Shown: positions 2,904-57,112 of the stretch, piece after piece
Position numbering within the stretch: the first letter of the stretch is position 1
Layout of the letters: each line of letters opens with the position of its first letter
Sequence record: LC819009.1
Direction: 5' to 3' (one strand)
DNA: 64,000 bases
Translations under genes and position numbers: made by a program
The notes under the pieces: model-generated
Database searches by the model: none
Seen by the model: the letters and a program-made list of their open reading frames with translations, nothing else
Told to the model about the DNA's origin: nothing

Positions 2904-4249
2904 AGCCTTCTGAGGTTGTACTTGATCAGCAACAGGAGAAGCGGAATGTAGTAGAACCGTTCCACATGTCCCCAGTTGAGAATGTCGTCACACACTTTCA
3001 GAATATCGCCAGCGGCGATAATTTTAAAGTCGATGTAATCCAGCAGCAAACTTTCGAGCAACGACAGATTCGTGTTGTCGCGCGTATAGAAGGCGCTGGA
3101 GAGGACGTAGCCGTTGTCCATGTCGATGGGCTTGATGATGGGCATCGGAGCGATGGAGCCATCCGTAGGCGGCGTGGGAGGCACGTACGCAGGCATTGTC
3201 GACTTGATGTTGACTGGAAGCAGAGGTTTCTGGATTTCCTTGGCCATCATGAAGTCAACGTTCGTCTTCGGATCGACCGGATACACGACCTGAGCAATGC
3301 CCGAGTAGCGCATCGAAGCGAGAAGTGCCGAACGATGGAAATTCACCCGTGACGTCACGCCGGTCTTCGTGTAGATGAAGTTCATCAACTTCGGATCGCG
3401 ATTGGAGAGCATCGTCCACAGACTCATGGACGAAATCGCGCCATCGTCCCCGATGTTCAATTCACGAATCGACTGGATATGAACATCGTCGAACGAGTTC
3501 ATGATCGACTTGACGAAATCGACCAGTCCATGATCGTAAGTCGGCACGTCTTGCATCGGAACGACAATCGTCATGTACTCGCGACTGAAGTACTGGTTGA
3601 AGTACAGCTGGATGTAGTCGTACCAGTAGCCAGCCAGCTTCTTGCTGTTCTGATAGTCGTCCTCAACGAGCAAGGGATTCTGCAGGTTCAGCAGGAAGTC
3701 CTTGACGAAGTAGTACGTGACGATAGTCTTCTGATCCAGGTCGAAGATACGAGTCTGATCATTGATCGCAATCAGCTGATATTCGATCTGGTGGGCATGG
3801 TCCACGAAGATCTGCATCGCCTGCACTTTCGTGACCTTGAAGATACCTTCACGACCATCAGCAATGCCGGCGCGGAACATGTCACCTTCCTGAGGCACCA
3901 GGAAAGGATAGACGTTCGCCATACCCTGCATCGTCATTTCATTGGTTTGCGGATCTTGAGAAACCTGCGTCAAGTCCTGAGTCACTTTCAGTTCCATCGA
4001 CCAGATGCGACGGTACTGTTGGAGAACAGCAGGCAAGGACGTATCCTGGCCTTTGATCTCACTATTCTTGTCGAGGATCTGTGAGTAGTAATCCACTACC
4101 CACGGCGAGCCTTCGATATACGCAAGCAGATCGCTCTGAGGCGTATATTCGGTATCGATGACAGCGGTCTTCACACCCGGCCTGAAAGGACGGACAATGT
4201 CCTGCCTGGGCTGTGTGGGAGCGTTGTCGAGATCTGTCCAAAGCGGCAT
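2900..4249 (-). CDS. Virion structural protein (gp99-like)
   Basis: 449 aa; operonic; synteny. Confidence 0.6.
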   Translation of the reverse strand: MPLWTDLDNAPTQPRQDIVRPFRPGVKTAVIDTEYTPQSDLLAYIEGSPWVVDYYSQILDKNSEIKGQDTSLPAVLQQYRRIWSMELKVTQDLTQVSQDPQTNEMTMQGMANVYPFLVPQEGDMFRAGIADGREGIFKVTKVQAMQIFVDHAHQIEYQLIAINDQTRIFDLDQKTIVTYYFVKDFLLNLQNPLLVEDDYQNSKKLAGYWYDYIQLYFNQYFSREYMTIVVPMQDVPTYDHGLVDFVKSIMNSFDDVHIQSIRELNIGDDGAISSMSLWTMLSNRDPKLMNFIYTKTGVTSRVNFHRSALLASMRYSGIAQVVYPVDPKTNVDFMMAKEIQKPLLPVNIKSTMPAYVPPTPPTDGSIAPMPIIKPIDMDNGYVLSSAFYTRDNTNLSLLESLLLDYIDFKIIAAGDILKVCDDILNWGHVERFYYIPLLLLLIKYNLRRL

Positions 4250-4258
4250 TGCGTCCTC

Positions 4259-5824
4259 TTATTTCTTCGATTGGAACACGCCATTGACGGTGCTGAACTG
4301 CACGGTCTTCATGGCACGATTGATGGTTCGGCCTTTGAGGCATTCAGCGAATGCATCGTAGGTACGCGGCGTCAAGCCGTTAGCGATGATGTTATCGCAC
4401 GGACGATAGTTACCGGCCGTCGTCGGTGCAATGTACTGAACGATCTGATCGAACGCACAGCGGGCATTGCGAAGACGAGCTTTCGCATCTTCCGTGATGT
4501 AGGTCAGGTCAGTGGTCACCGAAATACGCAGATGCCAGACCTTACGCTTATTGAGAGGTTGAGTCGAATAGATGTTCAGATTCTCATCCATGCGAATCCA
4601 GGTAGGATCTACCAGCAGTCGACCCATGTAAAGGGCCACGTTCACGGCAGACTGACGAGGCTTTGTCACGTACTGGGCTTCCGATGCCATGAACTGCTTC
4701 ATGCAGTCACTGAACTGGAAACCATACGAATCCGCTTCGAGATCCGTCAGGTTCATGAGCAGGTTCGGATCCATTCCCGCCGCCACCTGATCGTCAGTCG
4801 GCAACAGAACGAGAGTCGTGACCATGCGCATCGTTCTCTCAGGAACATTGCGAGGCATAAACTCATCGAAGGTCGGGAAGTAACGACCCGGGAAATCCTG
4901 ATAGACAGGATTCACGTTCTGCATCGATTCGAACGATTTCAGATGCGCCATCGACCAGCTACGCGATTGCTGGTGATCTTGCAAACGCTGAAAGCCTGTT
5001 TCGTTTCGGAACTTCTTGCTCAGGATCTGATTGTGAATCGAGATCGGATACATGAAGTGAATGTCCTTCGGCTTCTCGTAACGCAGCACGTAAGGAATTT
5101 CCACTTCCCACACATCCGTCTCATCTTTACGCTGACCGAAGTCAGGCTCAGAGCCGATGTCAAAGAAGCCAAGACAACGCATCTGGGTTTCCTTGAAGAC
5201 ACCCAATGTGTTCTTTCCTGCCTGATCCGTCAATAGACCATAGCGGGGATTGACCCATTTCTGGAAGAACGTGTCAAAGTCCTCACCATAGCCTGCTACA
5301 GCTTCCTGGAGGCGATGGATCTCTCTGAGGATGACCATGTAGGACTCCGGCATCGCAAACGAATACTGAAGCGTATGGAGCCACGTATCCTCACGATTGG
5401 GGATCTTCATGATCATGTAATCGTACCAGCGACGAGCATCCGTCTTGTTCTTGGCACGATAGTGGATCGTGAACTTCATTTCCACCGATGCATAAATCGG
5501 ACGCATCTCGATTTCGAGGTCACGATTCAGAAAGAGCGGAATTTGTTCAGGTTGTTTGGTCACCATTGCAGGCAGCCAATCATTGACATAGTTCTCCGTG
5601 ATTTCGATGAAGATCTTGTCAGTCGTCGGCAGGCGAATGGTTTCGTATTTGTTCGAGATGTAGCCATGAGGCTGAGCGACCGTATCCGCATAACCCGGAT
5701 AGTTGATATTCATGTCTGCAGGCAGACCGAGTCGATCGATCAGAATTTCCTGGACCGTGGCTACAGCGATGGCACGACTCACCGACTGATCGGATTCCAG
5801 GATAGGTCTTTGAATCTTGGGCAT
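4259..5824 (-). CDS. Virion structural protein (gp98-like)
   Basis: 521 aa; operonic; synteny. Confidence 0.6.
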   Translation of the reverse strand: MPKIQRPILESDQSVSRAIAVATVQEILIDRLGLPADMNINYPGYADTVAQPHGYISNKYETIRLPTTDKIFIEITENYVNDWLPAMVTKQPEQIPLFLNRDLEIEMRPIYASVEMKFTIHYRAKNKTDARRWYDYMIMKIPNREDTWLHTLQYSFAMPESYMVILREIHRLQEAVAGYGEDFDTFFQKWVNPRYGLLTDQAGKNTLGVFKETQMRCLGFFDIGSEPDFGQRKDETDVWEVEIPYVLRYEKPKDIHFMYPISIHNQILSKKFRNETGFQRLQDHQQSRSWSMAHLKSFESMQNVNPVYQDFPGRYFPTFDEFMPRNVPERTMRMVTTLVLLPTDDQVAAGMDPNLLMNLTDLEADSYGFQFSDCMKQFMASEAQYVTKPRQSAVNVALYMGRLLVDPTWIRMDENLNIYSTQPLNKRKVWHLRISVTTDLTYITEDAKARLRNARCAFDQIVQYIAPTTAGNYRPCDNIIANGLTPRTYDAFAECLKGRTINRAMKTVQFSTVNGVFQSKK

Positions 5825-24188: not shown

Positions 24189-24294
24189 GATTGGTCTCCT
24201 AGTTTAACCAGGGTATCTGCCGAAAGAATAAAAAAATAAAGCAAAAAAAAATCCCCGGTGTTACCCGGGGAGAAAATACACGCGCCGCCGAGGG

Positions 24295-25944: not shown

Positions 25945-26031
25945 GTTGATTTTTTCTGCATTATATCTGAACGCTACACAAATAAAAACAGACATAGACC
26001 AATACCAGAAGCCTTGCGGCCTCTGGTATCG

Positions 26032-26544
26032 TCATTTCTTTTGCTGTTGATTACTAGGCGTTTGATCGAGCAACTTCTCCAACTTCCGAATGGCGCCGTT
26101 TCCGGCACCCAGGAGCTTGGCGCTATGCTTCTTCGCCGAGTTAATCACCTTCAGGAAATCGCGTCGAGGATAACGAATTAACTCATCGAAGGAAAACCCG
26201 AAGATTTCGTGCACCTTGTTTTCGGCAAACTGGTCGAGACGGAAGTCAAACGGGTCCACACGAGCCAGATCCTCAAGCGGCGAGCAGAATAACAGAGGCC
26301 ATGGAACGTTCTTGAAGTCGTCCGGTCCGTCGTGATTGTAGATGCCGAATGCGGTTTCGTACTTCATCCGCATGAACAACTCCGCGTCCACCACATTGGG
26401 TAGTTTGGCGTTGGTCATGGCTTCCAGAATCACGTTGACCGGAGACCTGCCCCTGTCTTCTATTCTCGCCAACTCGGGTTCTAGTCCGATGTGTCCTCCA
26501 GACTCCTCGATGAGAGTCCAAGCAACTTCTGCTCGACCAGCTGA
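26032..26544 (-). CDS. Downstream ORF of putative tail assembly chaperone pair (T-like part, probably reached by -1 frameshift)
   Basis: Open in the -1 frame across the T8 run; C-terminal FGFSFDELIRYPRRDF resembles GT-type chaperone ends; alternative own ATG at 26418. Confidence 0.55.
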   Translation of the reverse strand, partial: SAGRAEVAWTLIEESGGHIGLEPELARIEDRGRSPVNVILEAMTNAKLPNVVDAELFMRMKYETAFGIYNHDGPDDFKNVPWPLLFCSPLEDLARVDPFDFRLDQFAENKVHEIFGFSFDELIRYPRRDFLKVINSAKKHSAKLLGAGNGAIRKLEKLLDQTPSNQQQKK

Positions 26545-28007
26545 AAAAAAACCGAAACCGCATCGAGTGCAATCAGGCGCGGCCACTTGTCGCCGGACAG
26601 GGTGTCCTCGTACTCGTTGACCGAAGTCGTCGCAATGATTGCGACTTGCGTGTTGTTGATGTAGTCGCTGATCGCCTTGAAGAACTTCCGGGAGATCTCG
26701 TCGGAGGCCGAGAGAGACACGAGCACCTTGTCCACGTTTTCACGCGTGGTATAGAGCTCGCCATCTTCTTCGATAGCCTTGACGTAGTGCGAGTACTGGC
26801 GCAGACGGGAAGCCTTAGCCAATTGGCTGATGTACTGCATGCGCTTCTGGTCGGTCGCTTCCGCGCCAAGAGCTTCGTGAACCGCGGCGTTGATTTCGTT
26901 GATCCACTTCTCGCCGGTGTCGAAGTACTCGCGCAGATTCGGCGTATACAGATGCAGCTTCACACCTTCGCCGATTTCGACCACCGTGTTCTGGTTGAAG
27001 ACGAACTGGTCCTTGTAGTCCTTGATCGTCTTGAGCGTCATCGGCGCTTCGATGCGCTTGACCATGTGTGCCAGTTGCTCTTCCTTGAACATTTTGGCGT
27101 TCATGAAGAGACACTTGCGCAGGTCGATGATCTGGTGCAGTTCTTCCTTCGGCAGCTTCGTATCTTCCGTGAAGACAGCCCGCGACATCGGGAAGCCGTT
27201 CGGATAGATCGAGGATGCGACCGACAGAGCGATCAGCGGCAGATCGTTCACGGTGATGTGATCGACCAGGTTTTCCTTGGGCAGATCGTTGACCGTCGTT
27301 TCGATCAGCGAGCCAACCCATGCTTCGAAAACAGCTTTGGCCGTGAAGACCGAGTTGTTCGCGAACATGAGACCGTGCGTGGCCCGGCCGAGCTTGATCG
27401 GTTCAGCGATGATGGTACGCCACAGGCCGATGATGTCGTATTCTTCCAGCGGCTTCACAGTCGCATAGAAGCCCGAGCCAACGAGCGGAACCTGTACCGG
27501 CGAACCCAGACCAAGACGCGCACGAACCGACAGGTTCAAACGCTCCGAGCTCATCTTCGCGCCACGTCCCTTGTTCGTGAACTTGGGACGACCGACGTTG
27601 ACGTTCTGGCCTGCGTAGTTCAGAGCGTTGCGCCATTCGGCATTCGGGTCAGCGAGCGCATCTTCGAACACGCCATGAGCCGGAACCGAACGGAAGCCGT
27701 TGAGCAGCGTCTGATACCAGTTCACCGCATCTTCGTTGACGTCGACTTCGCCCATCTTGGTCGCTGTCATGTCGTCGTTGATACGGCTTGCCGAATCAGG
27801 CAGAAGAGGAACCAGGATATCCTGAAACTTCTTCAGTTCTTCTTCGCTGGGAGCAGGCGACATCAAGTCGGTCTTGCTTTCCCAGTTCTTTGCTTGCTTG
27901 GGCACCTCGACGGTCTGCGGGTCGATACTGACCTGCGTTTCGTCGGGCATGTGAAGCTCGGGCTCGTCACCCGAGCCGCCCTGGTTGTCTTCAGGAGCGA
28001 TTGCCAT
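26481..28007 (-). CDS. Conserved jumbo-phage protein, putative tail/baseplate assembly chaperone (G-like)
   Basis: 508 aa; FYATVKPLEEYD segment reminiscent of T4 gp26-type chaperones; slippery site near the 3' end. Confidence 0.55.
   Translation of the reverse strand: MAIAPEDNQGGSGDEPELHMPDETQVSIDPQTVEVPKQAKNWESKTDLMSPAPSEEELKKFQDILVPLLPDSASRINDDMTATKMGEVDVNEDAVNWYQTLLNGFRSVPAHGVFEDALADPNAEWRNALNYAGQNVNVGRPKFTNKGRGAKMSSERLNLSVRARLGLGSPVQVPLVGSGFYATVKPLEEYDIIGLWRTIIAEPIKLGRATHGLMFANNSVFTAKAVFEAWVGSLIETTVNDLPKENLVDHITVNDLPLIALSVASSIYPNGFPMSRAVFTEDTKLPKEELHQIIDLRKCLFMNAKMFKEEQLAHMVKRIEAPMTLKTIKDYKDQFVFNQNTVVEIGEGVKLHLYTPNLREYFDTGEKWINEINAAVHEALGAEATDQKRMQYISQLAKASRLRQYSHYVKAIEEDGELYTTRENVDKVLVSLSASDEISRKFFKAISDYINNTQVAIIATTSVNEYEDTLSGDKWPRLIALDAVSVFFQLVEQKLLGLSSRSLEDTSD
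26544..26551 (-). promoter_or_regulatory. Putative -1 ribosomal frameshift site (GTT TTT TTT CAG)
   Basis: 8-T run in the correct phase; -1 frame open for 170 more codons. Confidence 0.6.
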
Positions 28008-28019
28008 GTAGCTGGTTCC

Positions 28020-28781
28020 TTAGATGCTGATCAGGCCAGAGCCAACGCGCGGATCCACGTCGTTCGGTTCGGCGGCTTTCGTCGTGTCGACGTCGAAGTC
28101 GGTGGGACGACGGCCTTCAGCCGGCTGGTTGATGATTTCCGACGGTTTGAGTGCATCTTCGCCATCGGCGCTGATACCTTCCATGCCTTCGGCCGGAGCT
28201 TCGACTTCCTTCGCTGCTTGCGGAACGTCGCCTTCGTCGAGGATGGCGACTTCCTGGCCGGCAGCACGCGCAGCTTCGATCTGTTCGACCGTCAGTGCGT
28301 CTTGCGCTTCGAGCAGTTCCTTGAGCGCCTTGTTGTAGATCAGGTTCAGCGCGCCGATGATCGGCTGGAACTTGTTGAAGAGGTCGATGTCGAATGCCTG
28401 ATAGGCTTCGAAGATGCGGTACGCTTTCGAGAGCTCTTCGTAGCTCAGGCACAGCTTACGGATGTGGCCGTGGCTGTCCCAGAGAGCCTGGAATTCCTTG
28501 GCCATTTCGGCGACGAGCGGCTGGATCTTCGCGATTTCGGCGTCGAACGCTTCCTTCTCGCCGTTCTTGGCGACCTTCATCAGCACGACCGGGTGGTTGT
28601 ACTGTGCGAACAGTTCAGCCAGCTTGTTGATGTTCTTCTGGCTGCGTTGGTGAACTTCTTTCAGCTGATACCAGCAGCGGGAGGTCTTCTCGCGATCGAA
28701 CGATTTCTTGCCGCTCGTCATGCCGGCTGCTGCGCGGCGTTCTGCGTCTTTCTGACGACGGCTTGCGGATTTTTGCGTCAT
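28020..28781 (-). CDS. Hypothetical helical protein with acidic tail
   Basis: 253 aa; strong codon bias; GGGGA RBS. Confidence 0.7.
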   Translation of the reverse strand: MTQKSASRRQKDAERRAAAGMTSGKKSFDREKTSRCWYQLKEVHQRSQKNINKLAELFAQYNHPVVLMKVAKNGEKEAFDAEIAKIQPLVAEMAKEFQALWDSHGHIRKLCLSYEELSKAYRIFEAYQAFDIDLFNKFQPIIGALNLIYNKALKELLEAQDALTVEQIEAARAAGQEVAILDEGDVPQAAKEVEAPAEGMEGISADGEDALKPSEIINQPAEGRRPTDFDVDTTKAAEPNDVDPRVGSGLISI

Positions 28782-28895
28782 TTGTCATATCCCCAGTAGG
28801 AATTTTAGATGGTTCACCAGACGATAACTTCAGGTAAATAAAAAAGTATTTATTTACTCTGTTGTGTAGATCCTCTGATGAATAAGGAGAACACT

Positions 28896-36214: not shown

Positions 36215-36559
36215 TTAGTTACCTAATGAATCCAGGACCTTCCGAGCCTCAGACGGTTTCCAACAATCCCGTCCGTACACCTGCTTCAGAAGTTCAAAGG
36301 ACTCGTAGTACTCCGGTTCCCACTGATCCTCAAGGCCGTAGCACGAGCAGTGTGATCCGTGCACATCGAAGAATTGCTTCTTCTCGTGATCGTAACCAAA
36401 CACCACCGATGATCCGGAATAATCCTCATACGTGTACCCTGCGTACAGGATTTGGTACTTTGGATCGTCCTTGACGTTGAACTGGCGAAAGACATCTTCG
36501 CGTGATTCGAACAGATCGTGGAAAATGGGTTCTTTAGACAACAGGATAGCTTCAGTCAT
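36215..36559 (-). CDS. Hypothetical protein
   Basis: 114 aa from MTEAIL; YEDYSG and HGSHCSCYGLE motifs. Confidence 0.7.
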   Translation of the reverse strand: MTEAILLSKEPIFHDLFESREDVFRQFNVKDDPKYQILYAGYTYEDYSGSSVVFGYDHEKKQFFDVHGSHCSCYGLEDQWEPEYYESFELLKQVYGRDCWKPSEARKVLDSLGN

Positions 36560-36754
36560 GATAATTCCAGTATTGAGTTTGAAGGAAAAGCATTTCCCTA
36601 AAGCACTCTTTACTGAACTTCTCACTACTTAACCACCCAAGTTGCGCCTTCGTAAAGGGGTGGCCCGAGATCTTTATCGTTGGATTAGAACGCTTTGTTG
36701 AGCCGCACACCGTAGGAGGTTGGAGTATGCGCTCGAACTCGATCTCAAAGCCGA

Positions 36755-36870
36755 AAAAAAATAGCAGGAAGGCATCTTCCTGCAAAAGGGGGAGTTACCC
36801 CGAACGTACCGACTCCCTTCACCACAAAGGAGTTTGCTGCCGCATGAGCGTGCTGCTAATCGAGTCGGTC
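36755..36870 (-). ncRNA. Candidate small structured RNA ending in a terminator
   Basis: ACCGACUC/GAGUCGGU stem enclosing two hairpins; GGGG/CCCC hairpin; GCAGGAAG-AUGC-CUUCCUGC plus U8. Confidence 0.4.
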
Positions 36871-57050: not shown

Positions 57051-57112
57051 TTTCAGATCCCGAAAACAAAAAAAAATATGGTCAGGGATTTCCCCTGACC
57101 ATACTCCGAACA

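What the first reader, a model, noticed from the sequence alone, without database searches (positions are those of the whole stretch)
26032..28007. Putative programmed -1 frameshift giving a G/GT-type tail chaperone pair
Seen: near the end of the 508-aa ORF the codons read GTT TTT TTT CAG (T8 at 26544-26551). The -1 frame there reads FFSAGRAEV and stays open 170 codons, predicting a fusion of about 658 aa. Hairpins lie downstream (26520-26534, 26501-26518). The fusion ends with FGFSFDELIRYPRRDF, like GT-type C-termini. Known: lambda G/GT and P2 E/E' (T-rich slip site) use -1 frameshifts for tail chaperones. Inference: the same recoding operates in a nucleus-forming jumbo phage, which I do not recall being described.
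Basis: partly seen in the sequence, partly recalled or inferred. Interest (0 to 1): 0.75.

Follow-up and report, generated by a model that had tools for sequence, protein, structure and literature searches.

The report
Conserved frameshift in jumbo-phage core gene
A run of eight T's near the end of a 508-codon phage gene is a conserved signal that lets some ribosomes slip back one base and add a further 170-residue domain, and the same unannotated arrangement is present in every nucleus-forming jumbo phage examined, including phiKZ.

Summary
The window is the last 64 kb of Ralstonia phage FLC4-5C, a phiKZ-like phage. ORF1 (26481-28007, minus strand) is the homologue of phiKZ gp77, chimallivirus core gene cg18, function unknown.

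The core observation holds. ORF1 reads GTT TTT TTT across a T8 run, and the -1 frame is open from there for 170 codons.

In 70 non-identical loci (35 clusters at 50% identity):
- the downstream reading frame is always -1;
- it is open from the T-run for at least 113 codons past the ORF1 stop;
- 64 loci carry T_TTT_TTT or T_TTT_TTC on an invariant Phe-Phe.

Many loci have no start codon for the conserved downstream domain. No in-frame fusion was found among 1.84 billion representative proteins. Synonymous variation in ORF1 collapses exactly at the run.

I conclude this is a programmed -1 frameshift giving a short and a long isoform. Transcriptional slippage is not excluded.

It is not a G/GT family member: the size, fold and gene neighbourhood all differ. 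The ORF1 model does resemble predicted structures of T4-like baseplate-hub assembly proteins, so a tail-assembly chaperone role is plausible but only inferred.

I found no published description.

The parts
26481..28007 (-). ORF1, 508 aa (FLC4-5C gp204). Homologue of phiKZ gp77, Goslar gp81, RAY gp267, 201phi2-1 gp136 and SPN3US gp39, i.e. chimallivirus core gene cg18. This is the frame-0 product (short isoform).
   Evidence: PHROG 4585 at E 1.6e-149. cg18 table in the supplement of PMC10299810.
26544..26551 (-). T8 run. The in-frame slippery heptamer T_TTT_TTT occupies 26544-26550, on the Val-Phe-Phe codons 486-488 of ORF1.
   Evidence: Across 70 loci the heptamer is T_TTT_TTT in 45 and T_TTT_TTC in 19. 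A wobble T precedes Phe-Phe in 55 of 59 loci, against a 27% background.
26032..26550 (-). -1 frame coding segment from the slip site to its stop (26032-26034), 172 codons in that frame. It is the C-terminal extension of the long isoform. Residues of about 43-163 form a conserved all-alpha domain (PHROG 12109).
26481..26550 (-). Dual-coding overlap: the ORF1 tail in frame 0 and the start of the extension in frame -1.
   Evidence: The share of synonymous codon differences falls from 0.43 to 0.12-0.14 here, the lowest of 495 windows in the gene. No locus has a -1 stop in the 13 codons after Phe-Phe, against 26 of 70 in the 10 codons before it.
26434..26480 (-). Stretch annotated as intergenic in the GenBank record. 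It is coding in the -1 frame and acts as a linker.
   Evidence: Codon-position variability of 0.36/0.30/0.59 for -1-frame residues 24-44 (about 26419-26481, which includes this stretch), and indels in whole codons.
26032..26433 (-). gp203 as annotated in GenBank, starting at GTG 26433. This is a truncated call of the -1 segment. Neither that GTG nor ATG 26418 is conserved within the clade.
25997..26033 (-). Strong stem-loop directly after the -1 frame stop. It is the probable 3' end of the transcription unit that holds gp78, ORF1 and the extension.
   Evidence: The 81-nt segment containing it folds at -33 kcal/mol, z = -5.8. No convincing terminator between ORF1 and the extension; one weak 5-bp terminator-like match lies inside ORF1 at 27812-27825, and matches in the region are fewer than in shuffles.
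28020..28781 (-). Upstream gene (gp205), homologue of phiKZ gp78. It ends 12 nt before the ORF1 start. The same gene order is seen in phiKZ, 201phi2-1, Goslar and RAY.

Best explanation
ORF1 (core gene cg18, the phiKZ gp77 family) is expressed as two proteins.

Most ribosomes read frame 0 and finish 20 codons after the Phe-Phe pair, giving a 508-aa short isoform with a conserved C-terminal helix. A fraction slip back one base on U_UUU_UUU, with tRNA-Phe in both the P and A sites. These ribosomes continue in the -1 frame for 170 codons, giving a long isoform of about 658 aa. In the long form the terminal helix is replaced by a flexible linker and a conserved all-alpha domain of about 120 residues.

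The downstream 'gene' (gp203) is therefore mainly the 3' part of this one recoded gene. That a frame change happens at the run is shown by comparative evidence. That the ribosome rather than the RNA polymerase makes it is inferred.

A weaker inference, which I put at about 0.4, is that the protein is a non-virion baseplate-hub or tail assembly chaperone, and that the fixed short:long ratio matters for its function, as it does for G/GT.
For: (1) Conservation. In 70 of 70 non-identical loci the -1 frame is open from the run and continues for 113-174 codons past the ORF1 stop (median 147). The +1 frame control has a median of 12 codons. The loci form 35 clusters at 50% identity and 19 at 40%. They include phiKZ, 201phi2-1, Goslar, SPN3US, RAY, CR5 and Vibrio phages.

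(2) Slip signal. 64 of 70 loci have T_TTT_TTT or T_TTT_TTC in the ORF1 frame, on an invariant Phe-Phe. The first Phe codon is TTT in all loci, against a 34% background. A wobble T precedes it in 55 of 59 loci, against 27%.

(3) No independent start. 40 of 54 loci have no ATG, GTG or TTG in the -1 frame between its opening and a conserved His-[VIL] motif at or near the ORF1 stop (within about 55 nt). In several loci the first start codon lies 221-413 nt into the conserved domain, phiKZ among them. Gene callers give lengths of 107-156 aa, or call no gene at all.

(4) Stop-codon pattern. -1-frame stops occur within 10 codons upstream of Phe-Phe in 26 of 70 loci and never in the 13 codons downstream.

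(5) Dual coding. Synonymous variation in ORF1 drops abruptly at the run. The 'intergenic' linker shows third-position variability and whole-codon indels in the -1 frame.

(6) No natural fusion. All 70 hits of the extension among 1.84 billion representative proteins are 71-171 aa. The near-full-length ORF1 homologues are 503-537 aa (one 309-aa fragment aside).

(7) Both tails are conserved. The frame-0 tail is more conserved than the -1 frame within the overlap.

(8) Function hint. Foldseek matches the ORF1 model to T4-like 'baseplate hub assembly protein/chaperone' models at E 2.5e-5 to 3e-3, with target-normalised TM-scores near 0.5. The annotators of phage DT01 made the same call. T4 gp26 is listed as a hub assembly chaperone in PMC3004832. 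201phi2-1 gp136 is not marked as found by virion mass spectrometry, although its neighbours gp138 and gp139 are. The family is absent from PDB and from the Goslar virion model.
Against: - There are no protein or RNA data. Nothing here shows the long product directly or gives its abundance.
- No conserved stimulatory structure follows the slip site in this lineage. No upstream Shine-Dalgarno-like element was apparent by eye in the contexts printed (not formally scanned). No Rfam frameshift element matched.
- Six of 70 loci lack a canonical heptamer: G_TTT_TTT in four, A_TTT_TTC in one and T_TTT_ATC in one.
- In this phage, GTG 26433 has a G-rich Shine-Dalgarno-like stretch 12-19 nt upstream. 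Some separate initiation of a truncated product cannot be excluded.
- A homopolymer run also fits transcriptional slippage.
- The function rests only on similarity between predicted structures. There is no sequence-level link and no PDB fold match.
Confidence: 0.72

Rival explanations
1. Transcriptional slippage. The phage's own multisubunit RNA polymerase stutters on the T7-T8 run, so a fraction of the mRNAs carry a run of altered length. Ribosomes translating those mRNAs normally then read through into the extension. The protein outcome is the same two isoforms, but the recoding happens at the RNA level.
For: - The signal is a pure homopolymer, 7 or 8 T long in 59 of 70 loci.
- No conserved ribosomal stimulator was found in the window's lineage.
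- Middle and late genes of these phages are transcribed by a non-canonical phage polymerase whose slippage behaviour is unknown (established knowledge).
Against: - The pattern follows the codon-phased X_XXY_YYZ rule better than it follows run length. 19 loci use T_TTT_TTC. Eleven loci have runs of only 5 or 6 T, short for polymerase slippage.
- Another T8 run sits inside the coding sequence of gp216 in the same window and is tolerated there.
- Several lineages have 8-10 bp stems starting 9-11 nt after the run. That is the usual place for a ribosomal stimulator.
Confidence: 0.17
2. Two ordinary genes. The downstream ORF is made only from its own start codon (GTG 26433 or ATG 26418 here), perhaps coupled to ORF1 termination. 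On this view the open -1 frame across the run is incidental.
For: - All 21 GenBank records inspected annotate two separate genes, or one gene.
- GTG 26433 has a G-rich stretch upstream with a duplex energy of -8.1 kcal/mol.
Against: - The frame offset is -1 in 70 of 70 loci, where 1 in 3 would be expected by chance.
- 40 of 54 loci have no start codon upstream of conserved -1-frame residues. In L027 the only start codon lies 413 nt downstream of the ORF1 stop.
- The annotated starts are not conserved even within the window's own clade.
- Dual-coding and linker-coding signatures are present.
- The T-run uses codons this gene otherwise avoids.
Confidence: 0.05
3. Artefact or decay. On this view a homopolymer sequencing error, or a recent frameshift mutation, has split one gene in this assembly.
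For: Homopolymer runs are error-prone on some sequencing platforms (general knowledge).
Against: - The same frame arrangement appears in 70 independent assemblies, both isolates and metagenomes, with runs of 5-8 T in differing flanking sequence.
- The frame-0 tail and its stop are conserved.
- No intact single-frame version exists in the databases searched.
Confidence: 0.01

Closest known systems
Tail assembly chaperone pairs made by -1 frameshifting (lambda G/GT, P2 E/E+E')
   Same: - A -1 shift near the 3' end of the upstream frame yields a minor, C-terminally extended isoform that shares the N-terminal body.
- The arrangement is conserved while the sequence diverges.
- The product is apparently not part of the virion.
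- The finding recalls a T-rich slip site for P2. I did not verify this.
   Different: - ORF1 is 508 aa and alpha/beta, not about 140 aa.
- It is not located between tube and tape-measure genes.
- No tail-assembly-chaperone profile or fold matches.
- In the long form the frame-0 tail, itself a conserved helix, is replaced rather than simply extended.
T4 gp26-type baseplate hub assembly protein/chaperone
   Same: - The ORF1 model matches several predicted structures annotated this way.
- T4 gp26 is classed as an assembly chaperone (PMC3004832).
- BFVD lists a second product of T4 gene 26, from an internal in-frame start (entry name).
   Different: - There is no sequence similarity.
- The targets are 225-310 aa against 508 aa for ORF1.
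- The similarity is between predicted models only.
- The second T4 product arises by internal initiation, not by frameshifting.
- No solved structure is available for comparison.
Other bacterial and phage -1 frameshift genes that set a fixed isoform ratio (T7 capsid 10A/10B, E. coli dnaX tau/gamma, IS3-family orfAB)
   Same: - An in-frame slippery heptamer is used.
- Two products share an N-terminal part.
- The ratio is set by slip efficiency rather than by separate promoters.
   Different: - Those sites usually have a mapped stimulator, either a stem-loop or an upstream Shine-Dalgarno-like element. None is conserved here.
- In dnaX the shifted product is the shorter one.
- These points come from established knowledge and were not tested here.
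Transcriptional slippage sites on A/T runs (for example some IS elements and bacterial or viral genes)
   Same: A homopolymer run lies at the junction of two overlapping frames.
   Different: - The run here is often shorter than typical slippage sites.
- It obeys codon phase.
- No RNA data exist.

Membership tests
Programmed -1 ribosomal frameshift site | Slippery heptamer X_XXY_YYZ in the upstream frame | tested here: met
   T_TTT_TTT at 26544-26550 in the ORF1 frame. A canonical heptamer is present in 64 of 70 related loci.
Programmed -1 ribosomal frameshift site | Conserved, coding -1 ORF that overlaps the end of the upstream ORF and has no obligatory start of its own | tested here: met
Programmed -1 ribosomal frameshift site | Stimulatory element (downstream structure or upstream Shine-Dalgarno-like sequence) | tested here: inconclusive
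   None is significant or conserved in the window's clade. About 10 of 58 other loci have z < -2 for the 60 nt after the run. Not every known site needs such an element.
Programmed -1 ribosomal frameshift site | Trans-frame protein product observed | not testable with these tools
   No proteomic or ribosome-profiling data were available.
G/GT-type tail assembly chaperones | Gene pair lies between the tail tube gene and the tape-measure gene | tested here: not met
   The nearby genes with an identifiable function are a thymidylate-kinase-like gene, a gp78 homologue, a gp79 homologue and a virion RNA polymerase subunit; the two ORFs directly downstream have no known function. The same synteny holds in phiKZ and 201phi2-1.
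G/GT-type tail assembly chaperones | Small (about 100-150 aa) chaperone protein recognisable by tail-assembly-chaperone profiles or fold | tested here: not met
   ORF1 is 508 aa. No such family matched among 6 ORF1 and 47 extension homologues in Pfam or PHROGs. Foldseek matches to 'tail assembly chaperone' models have E of 0.49 or worse.
G/GT-type tail assembly chaperones | -1 frameshift near the 3' end producing an extended minor isoform | tested here: met
   Comparative evidence only.
T4 gp26-like baseplate hub assembly proteins | Shared fold | tested here: inconclusive
   Foldseek against BFVD gives E 2.5e-5 to 3e-3, probability 1.00 and target-normalised TM-scores of 0.44-0.56 for more than eight targets so annotated. 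Both sides are predicted models, and the ORF1 model has pLDDT 71.
T4 gp26-like baseplate hub assembly proteins | Sequence-profile membership | tested here: not met
   No Pfam, NCBIfam or PHROG baseplate family matched. tblastn found only jumbo phages.
Chimallivirus core gene cg18 (phiKZ gp77 family) | Orthology to phiKZ gp77, Goslar gp81 and RAY gp267, with conserved synteny next to gp78-gp80 | tested here: met
   FLC6, RSL2 and RSF1 are listed among the chimallin-encoding phages.
Transcriptional slippage site | Long homopolymer run, with run-length heterogeneity in the RNA | tested here: inconclusive
   Run lengths are 5 T (2 loci), 6 T (9), 7 T (38) and 8 T (21). RNA heterogeneity cannot be tested here.

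The most novel reading that the evidence does not exclude
The frame change is made inside the phage nucleus by slippage of the phage's own non-canonical RNA polymerase on the T-run. On this reading, a core gene of all nucleus-forming phages is recoded at the RNA level, and the isoform ratio is set by the viral transcription machinery rather than by host ribosomes.
Probability: 0.15. Interest if true: 0.75.

Novelty: new member of a known kind. Interest (0 to 1): 0.62.

Why it matters
cg18 (phiKZ gp77) is one of the roughly 70 core genes shared by nucleus-forming jumbo phages, and its function is unknown.

If the recoding is real:
- Every genome of this family examined, model phages phiKZ, 201phi2-1, Goslar, SPN3US and RAY included, is mis-annotated at this locus.
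- A conserved 120-residue domain has been hidden as a variable 'small hypothetical protein'.
- The family has a gene whose product ratio is fixed by frameshifting.

This gives a direct handle on the gene's function. The fold resemblance to T4-type hub assembly chaperones adds a further suggestion: that frameshift-controlled assembly chaperones, known from lambda- and P2-like tails, also operate in giant contractile-tailed phages, where no such pair had been recognised.

The claim can be tested at once on existing proteomic, ribosome-profiling and RNA-seq data.

Tried and rejected
- **Sequence searches for function.** Pfam, NCBIfam, PHROGs and PDB, with single sequences and with profiles, gave nothing beyond PHROGs of unknown function.
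- **Foldseek against PDB** gave no match, best E 0.36. The extension model matched only uncharacterised orthologues.
- **Rfam** gave no hit.
- **Downstream hairpins** as stimulators in this lineage were rejected.
- **Natural in-frame fusions** were sought and not found. The 686-720 aa relatives (phiEaH2, CR5, the SPN3US type) have longer N-termini, not fusions, and keep the separate -1 frame.
- **A second T8 run** in the window (36754-36761) was checked as a possible further recoding site and rejected. It lies in codons 5-8 of annotated gp216, and the overlapping frame spans an intergenic gap.
- **Literature.** Ten full-text searches and checks of a 2025 review, the core-genome paper, a Tn-seq preprint and the Goslar virion preprint found no mention of this frameshift. 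One paper requested by DOI was not held.

Full report
**Identity of the locus**

The 2.2 kb around the finding is 100% identical to Ralstonia phage FLC4-5C (LC819009). It is 81-99% identical to FLC6/FLC8, RSL2, RSF1, RsoM3USA and SURPRISE13. The window is the last 64 kb of that 225.6 kb genome. FLC6, RSL2 and RSF1 are listed among the chimallin-encoding (nucleus-forming) phages in the supplement of PMC10299810.

The genes lie on the minus strand:
- ORF1 is 26481-28007 (508 aa, annotated gp204).
- The downstream frame is listed as 26032-26586 and annotated as gp203 from GTG 26433.

**The observation**

On the minus strand ORF1 reads GTT TTT TTT CAG. The T8 run occupies 26544-26551 and gives an in-frame T_TTT_TTT. 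The second frame is -1 relative to ORF1, reads FFSAGRAEV... from the run, and stays open for 170 codons.

Two details are wrong:
- The two small hairpins exist, but the region folds no better than shuffled sequence (z = +1.4 and +0.2). They are not part of the weak consensus fold of ten clade members (-7.4 kcal/mol).

**What ORF1 is**

tblastn finds homologues in 219 phage records, all of them jumbo phages. phiKZ gp77 is among them at 26% identity. The gene order gp80 (virion RNA polymerase), gp79, then divergently gp78, gp77 and the small downstream ORF is kept in phiKZ, 201phi2-1, Goslar, RAY, DT01, RP12 and FLC9. SPN3US and CR5 keep the same genes with the gp79-gp80 pair downstream on the same strand. 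The supplement of PMC10299810 lists Goslar gp081 = phiKZ gp077 = RAY gp267 as core gene cg18, 'hypothetical protein'.

**Comparative test of the recoding**

I collected 70 non-identical loci: GenBank phages, 55 IMG/VR contigs and five metagenome contigs. They form 35 clusters at 50% identity and 19 at 40% over the ORF1 core.

Frames:
- In all 70, the frame that encodes the downstream domain is -1 relative to ORF1.
- It is open continuously from the T-run for 113-174 codons past the ORF1 stop (median 147).
- The +1 frame runs a median of 12 codons.

Slip signal:
- The run sits on a Phe-Phe pair that is invariant in the six-sequence alignment and present in 69 of the 70 loci.
- The heptamer is T_TTT_TTT in 45 loci, T_TTT_TTC in 19, G_TTT_TTT in 4, A_TTT_TTC in 1 and T_TTT_ATC in 1.
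- The first Phe codon is always TTT, although TTT is only 34% of Phe codons elsewhere in these genes. In the window's ORF1 the count elsewhere is 1 TTT to 16 TTC.
- The preceding codon ends in T in 55 of 59 loci, against a 27% background.

Stop-codon pattern:
- -1-frame stops occur within the ten codons upstream of Phe-Phe in 26 of 70 loci.
- None occurs in the 13 codons downstream.
- Across loci, the only interval in which the frame change can happen runs from 3 nt before the Phe-Phe codons to 30 nt after them.

**Test of the rival: independent initiation**

- A conserved His-[Val/Ile/Leu] motif (His in 43 of 54 unique sequences) lies in the -1 frame at or near the ORF1 stop (within about 55 nt).
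- In 40 of 54 loci there is no ATG, GTG or TTG in that frame between its opening and this motif.
- In several loci the first possible start lies far inside the conserved domain: 221 nt past the ORF1 stop in phiKZ, and 254, 257, 284 and 413 nt in others.
- Gene callers accordingly give 107-156 aa with differing starts. In two contigs they call nothing there at all.
- Within the window's own clade (ten sequences, ORF1 identity down to 52%), neither GTG 26433 nor ATG 26418 is conserved.
- The stretch annotated as intergenic varies mainly at -1-frame third positions (0.36/0.30/0.59), and its indels are whole codons.
- In ORF1, the share of identical-residue codon pairs that differ synonymously is 0.43 over the gene and 0.39 just upstream of the run. 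It is 0.12-0.14 in the two windows that begin at the run. The 24-codon window starting at residue 484 is the lowest of 495.
- Searching the extension against 1.84 billion representative proteins returned 70 hits, all 71-171 aa. No lineage has fused the two parts in one frame. The near-full-length ORF1 homologues are 503-537 aa, one 309-aa fragment aside.
- The frame-0 tail also stays conserved, more so than the -1 frame within the overlap. Both endings therefore appear to be selected.
- In this phage, GTG 26433 has a G-rich stretch 12-19 nt upstream. Some extra initiation of a truncated product here cannot be excluded, but it cannot explain the family-wide pattern.

**Mechanism**

The data show that a frame change must occur at the run. 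Whether the ribosome or the RNA polymerase makes it is inferred.

I favour ribosomal -1 slippage for three reasons:
- The signal obeys codon phase (X_XXY_YYZ in 64 of 70 loci).
- It is kept when the run is only 5 or 6 T (11 of 70 loci).
- Every locus keeps at least one Phe codon that can re-pair perfectly after a one-base slip.

No stimulator is conserved in the window's lineage. Rfam has no match. Two unrelated lineages carry different 8-10 bp stems starting 9-11 nt after the run, and about 10 of 58 loci have z < -2 for the 60 nt downstream. Stimulators may therefore be lineage-specific. Transcriptional slippage by the phage polymerase remains possible (about 0.15-0.2).

A strong stem-loop follows the -1 stop (z = -5.8). 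No convincing terminator lies between ORF1 and the extension (one weak match inside ORF1). The two parts therefore appear to share one transcript.

**Function**

No sequence method gave a named family.

ORF1 model (pLDDT 71, pTM 0.72):
- Its last helix begins at the slip site. The long isoform therefore swaps this helix for the extension.
- Foldseek finds nothing in PDB.
- In the viral model library, after the chimallivirus orthologues, it finds a series of T4-like 'baseplate hub subunit / hub assembly protein / hub assembly chaperone' models. Their E-values run from 2.5e-5 to 3e-3, with target-normalised TM-scores near 0.5.
- The DT01 annotators reached the same name.
- T4 gp26 is tabulated as a hub assembly chaperone in PMC3004832.

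Evidence on virion presence:
- 201phi2-1 gp136 carries no virion mass-spectrometry note, unlike gp138 and gp139.
- Neither Goslar gp81 nor gp82 appears in the Goslar virion preprint.

Extension model (pLDDT 81): it is all-alpha with a long terminal helix and a disordered first 28 residues. It matches only uncharacterised orthologues.

My working view, at about 0.4, is that cg18 is a non-virion baseplate-hub or tail assembly factor made in two forms. This rests on similarity between predicted models.

**Comparison with known systems**

In operation this resembles the G/GT and E/E' chaperone pairs. It also resembles other fixed-ratio frameshift genes.

It is not a member of the G/GT family, because three features fail:
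- position between tube and tape-measure genes;
- small size;
- recognisable tail-assembly-chaperone profile or fold.

It is a member of the cg18 / phiKZ gp77 family.

**Novelty**

None of the 21 GenBank records I opened annotates a joined coding sequence. Ten full-text searches, a 2025 review of nucleus-forming phages, the core-genome paper and other checked papers contain no mention of it. The library does not hold most subscription journals, so an earlier description cannot be ruled out.

The mechanism is of a known kind. The gene family, and the reach of the signal across the chimalliviruses sampled, appear to be new.

The T-run is reported as a natural signal, at the coordinates the finding already gave.

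Noticed in passing
window 25997-26033 (- strand): A stem of 13-14 bp with a GCAA loop lies directly after the stop of the -1 frame (81-nt segment -33 kcal/mol, z = -5.8). A second stem-loop follows at about 25962-25996. It is a likely transcript 3' end for the gp78-ORF1-extension unit.
   Followed up: partly
window 36754-36761 (T8 on the - strand): A second T8 run, also read as TAT TTT TTT TCG, lies in codons 5-8 of annotated gp216 (36552-36785). A 126-codon frame overlaps it in the -1 relation, but that frame spans an intergenic gap and is unannotated. It is probably not a recoding site.
   Followed up: yes
window 24230-24251 and 57068-57076: A7 and A9 runs lie in the gap between gp200 and gp201. 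An A9 run lies between gp237 and gp238, next to a GC-rich inverted repeat (57078-57103). Read on the minus strand, the latter looks like an intrinsic terminator: a stem followed by a T9 run.
   Followed up: partly
window 26646-28799 (+ strand): A 717-codon open frame lies antisense to ORF1 and gp78. There is no evidence that it is a gene. It is probably a shadow of the codon bias on the opposite strand.
   Followed up: no
L023, L025, L027, L030, L033 and L041, L042, L044 (60 nt after the T-run): Two unrelated lineages have different 8-10 bp stems that begin 9-11 nt after the run. In the first group the 3' arm contains the ORF1 stop codon. No compensatory changes were seen. These are possibly lineage-specific frameshift stimulators.
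   Followed up: partly
L073 (RAY) 3523-4071; L006 (phiKZ) 5497-5739; L079 (PhiEaH1) 33-1741: Annotation of the locus is inconsistent. RAY gp266 is drawn 136 nt into gp267. phiKZ gp076.4 covers only the last 80 codons of a -1 frame that is about 170 codons long. In PhiEaH1 the ORF1 homologue is not annotated at all.
   Followed up: yes
BFVD hits A0A1B4XWT4 and A0A1B4XWS3 (Tenacibaculum phage pT24): A phage that did not appear among the cg18 tblastn hits gave weak fold hits to both ORF1 (E 8e-4) and the extension (E 3.9, target-normalised TM-score 0.71). The two proteins have similar UniProt accessions. This hints that a gp26-like gene with an adjacent small partner may exist beyond this family.
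   Followed up: no
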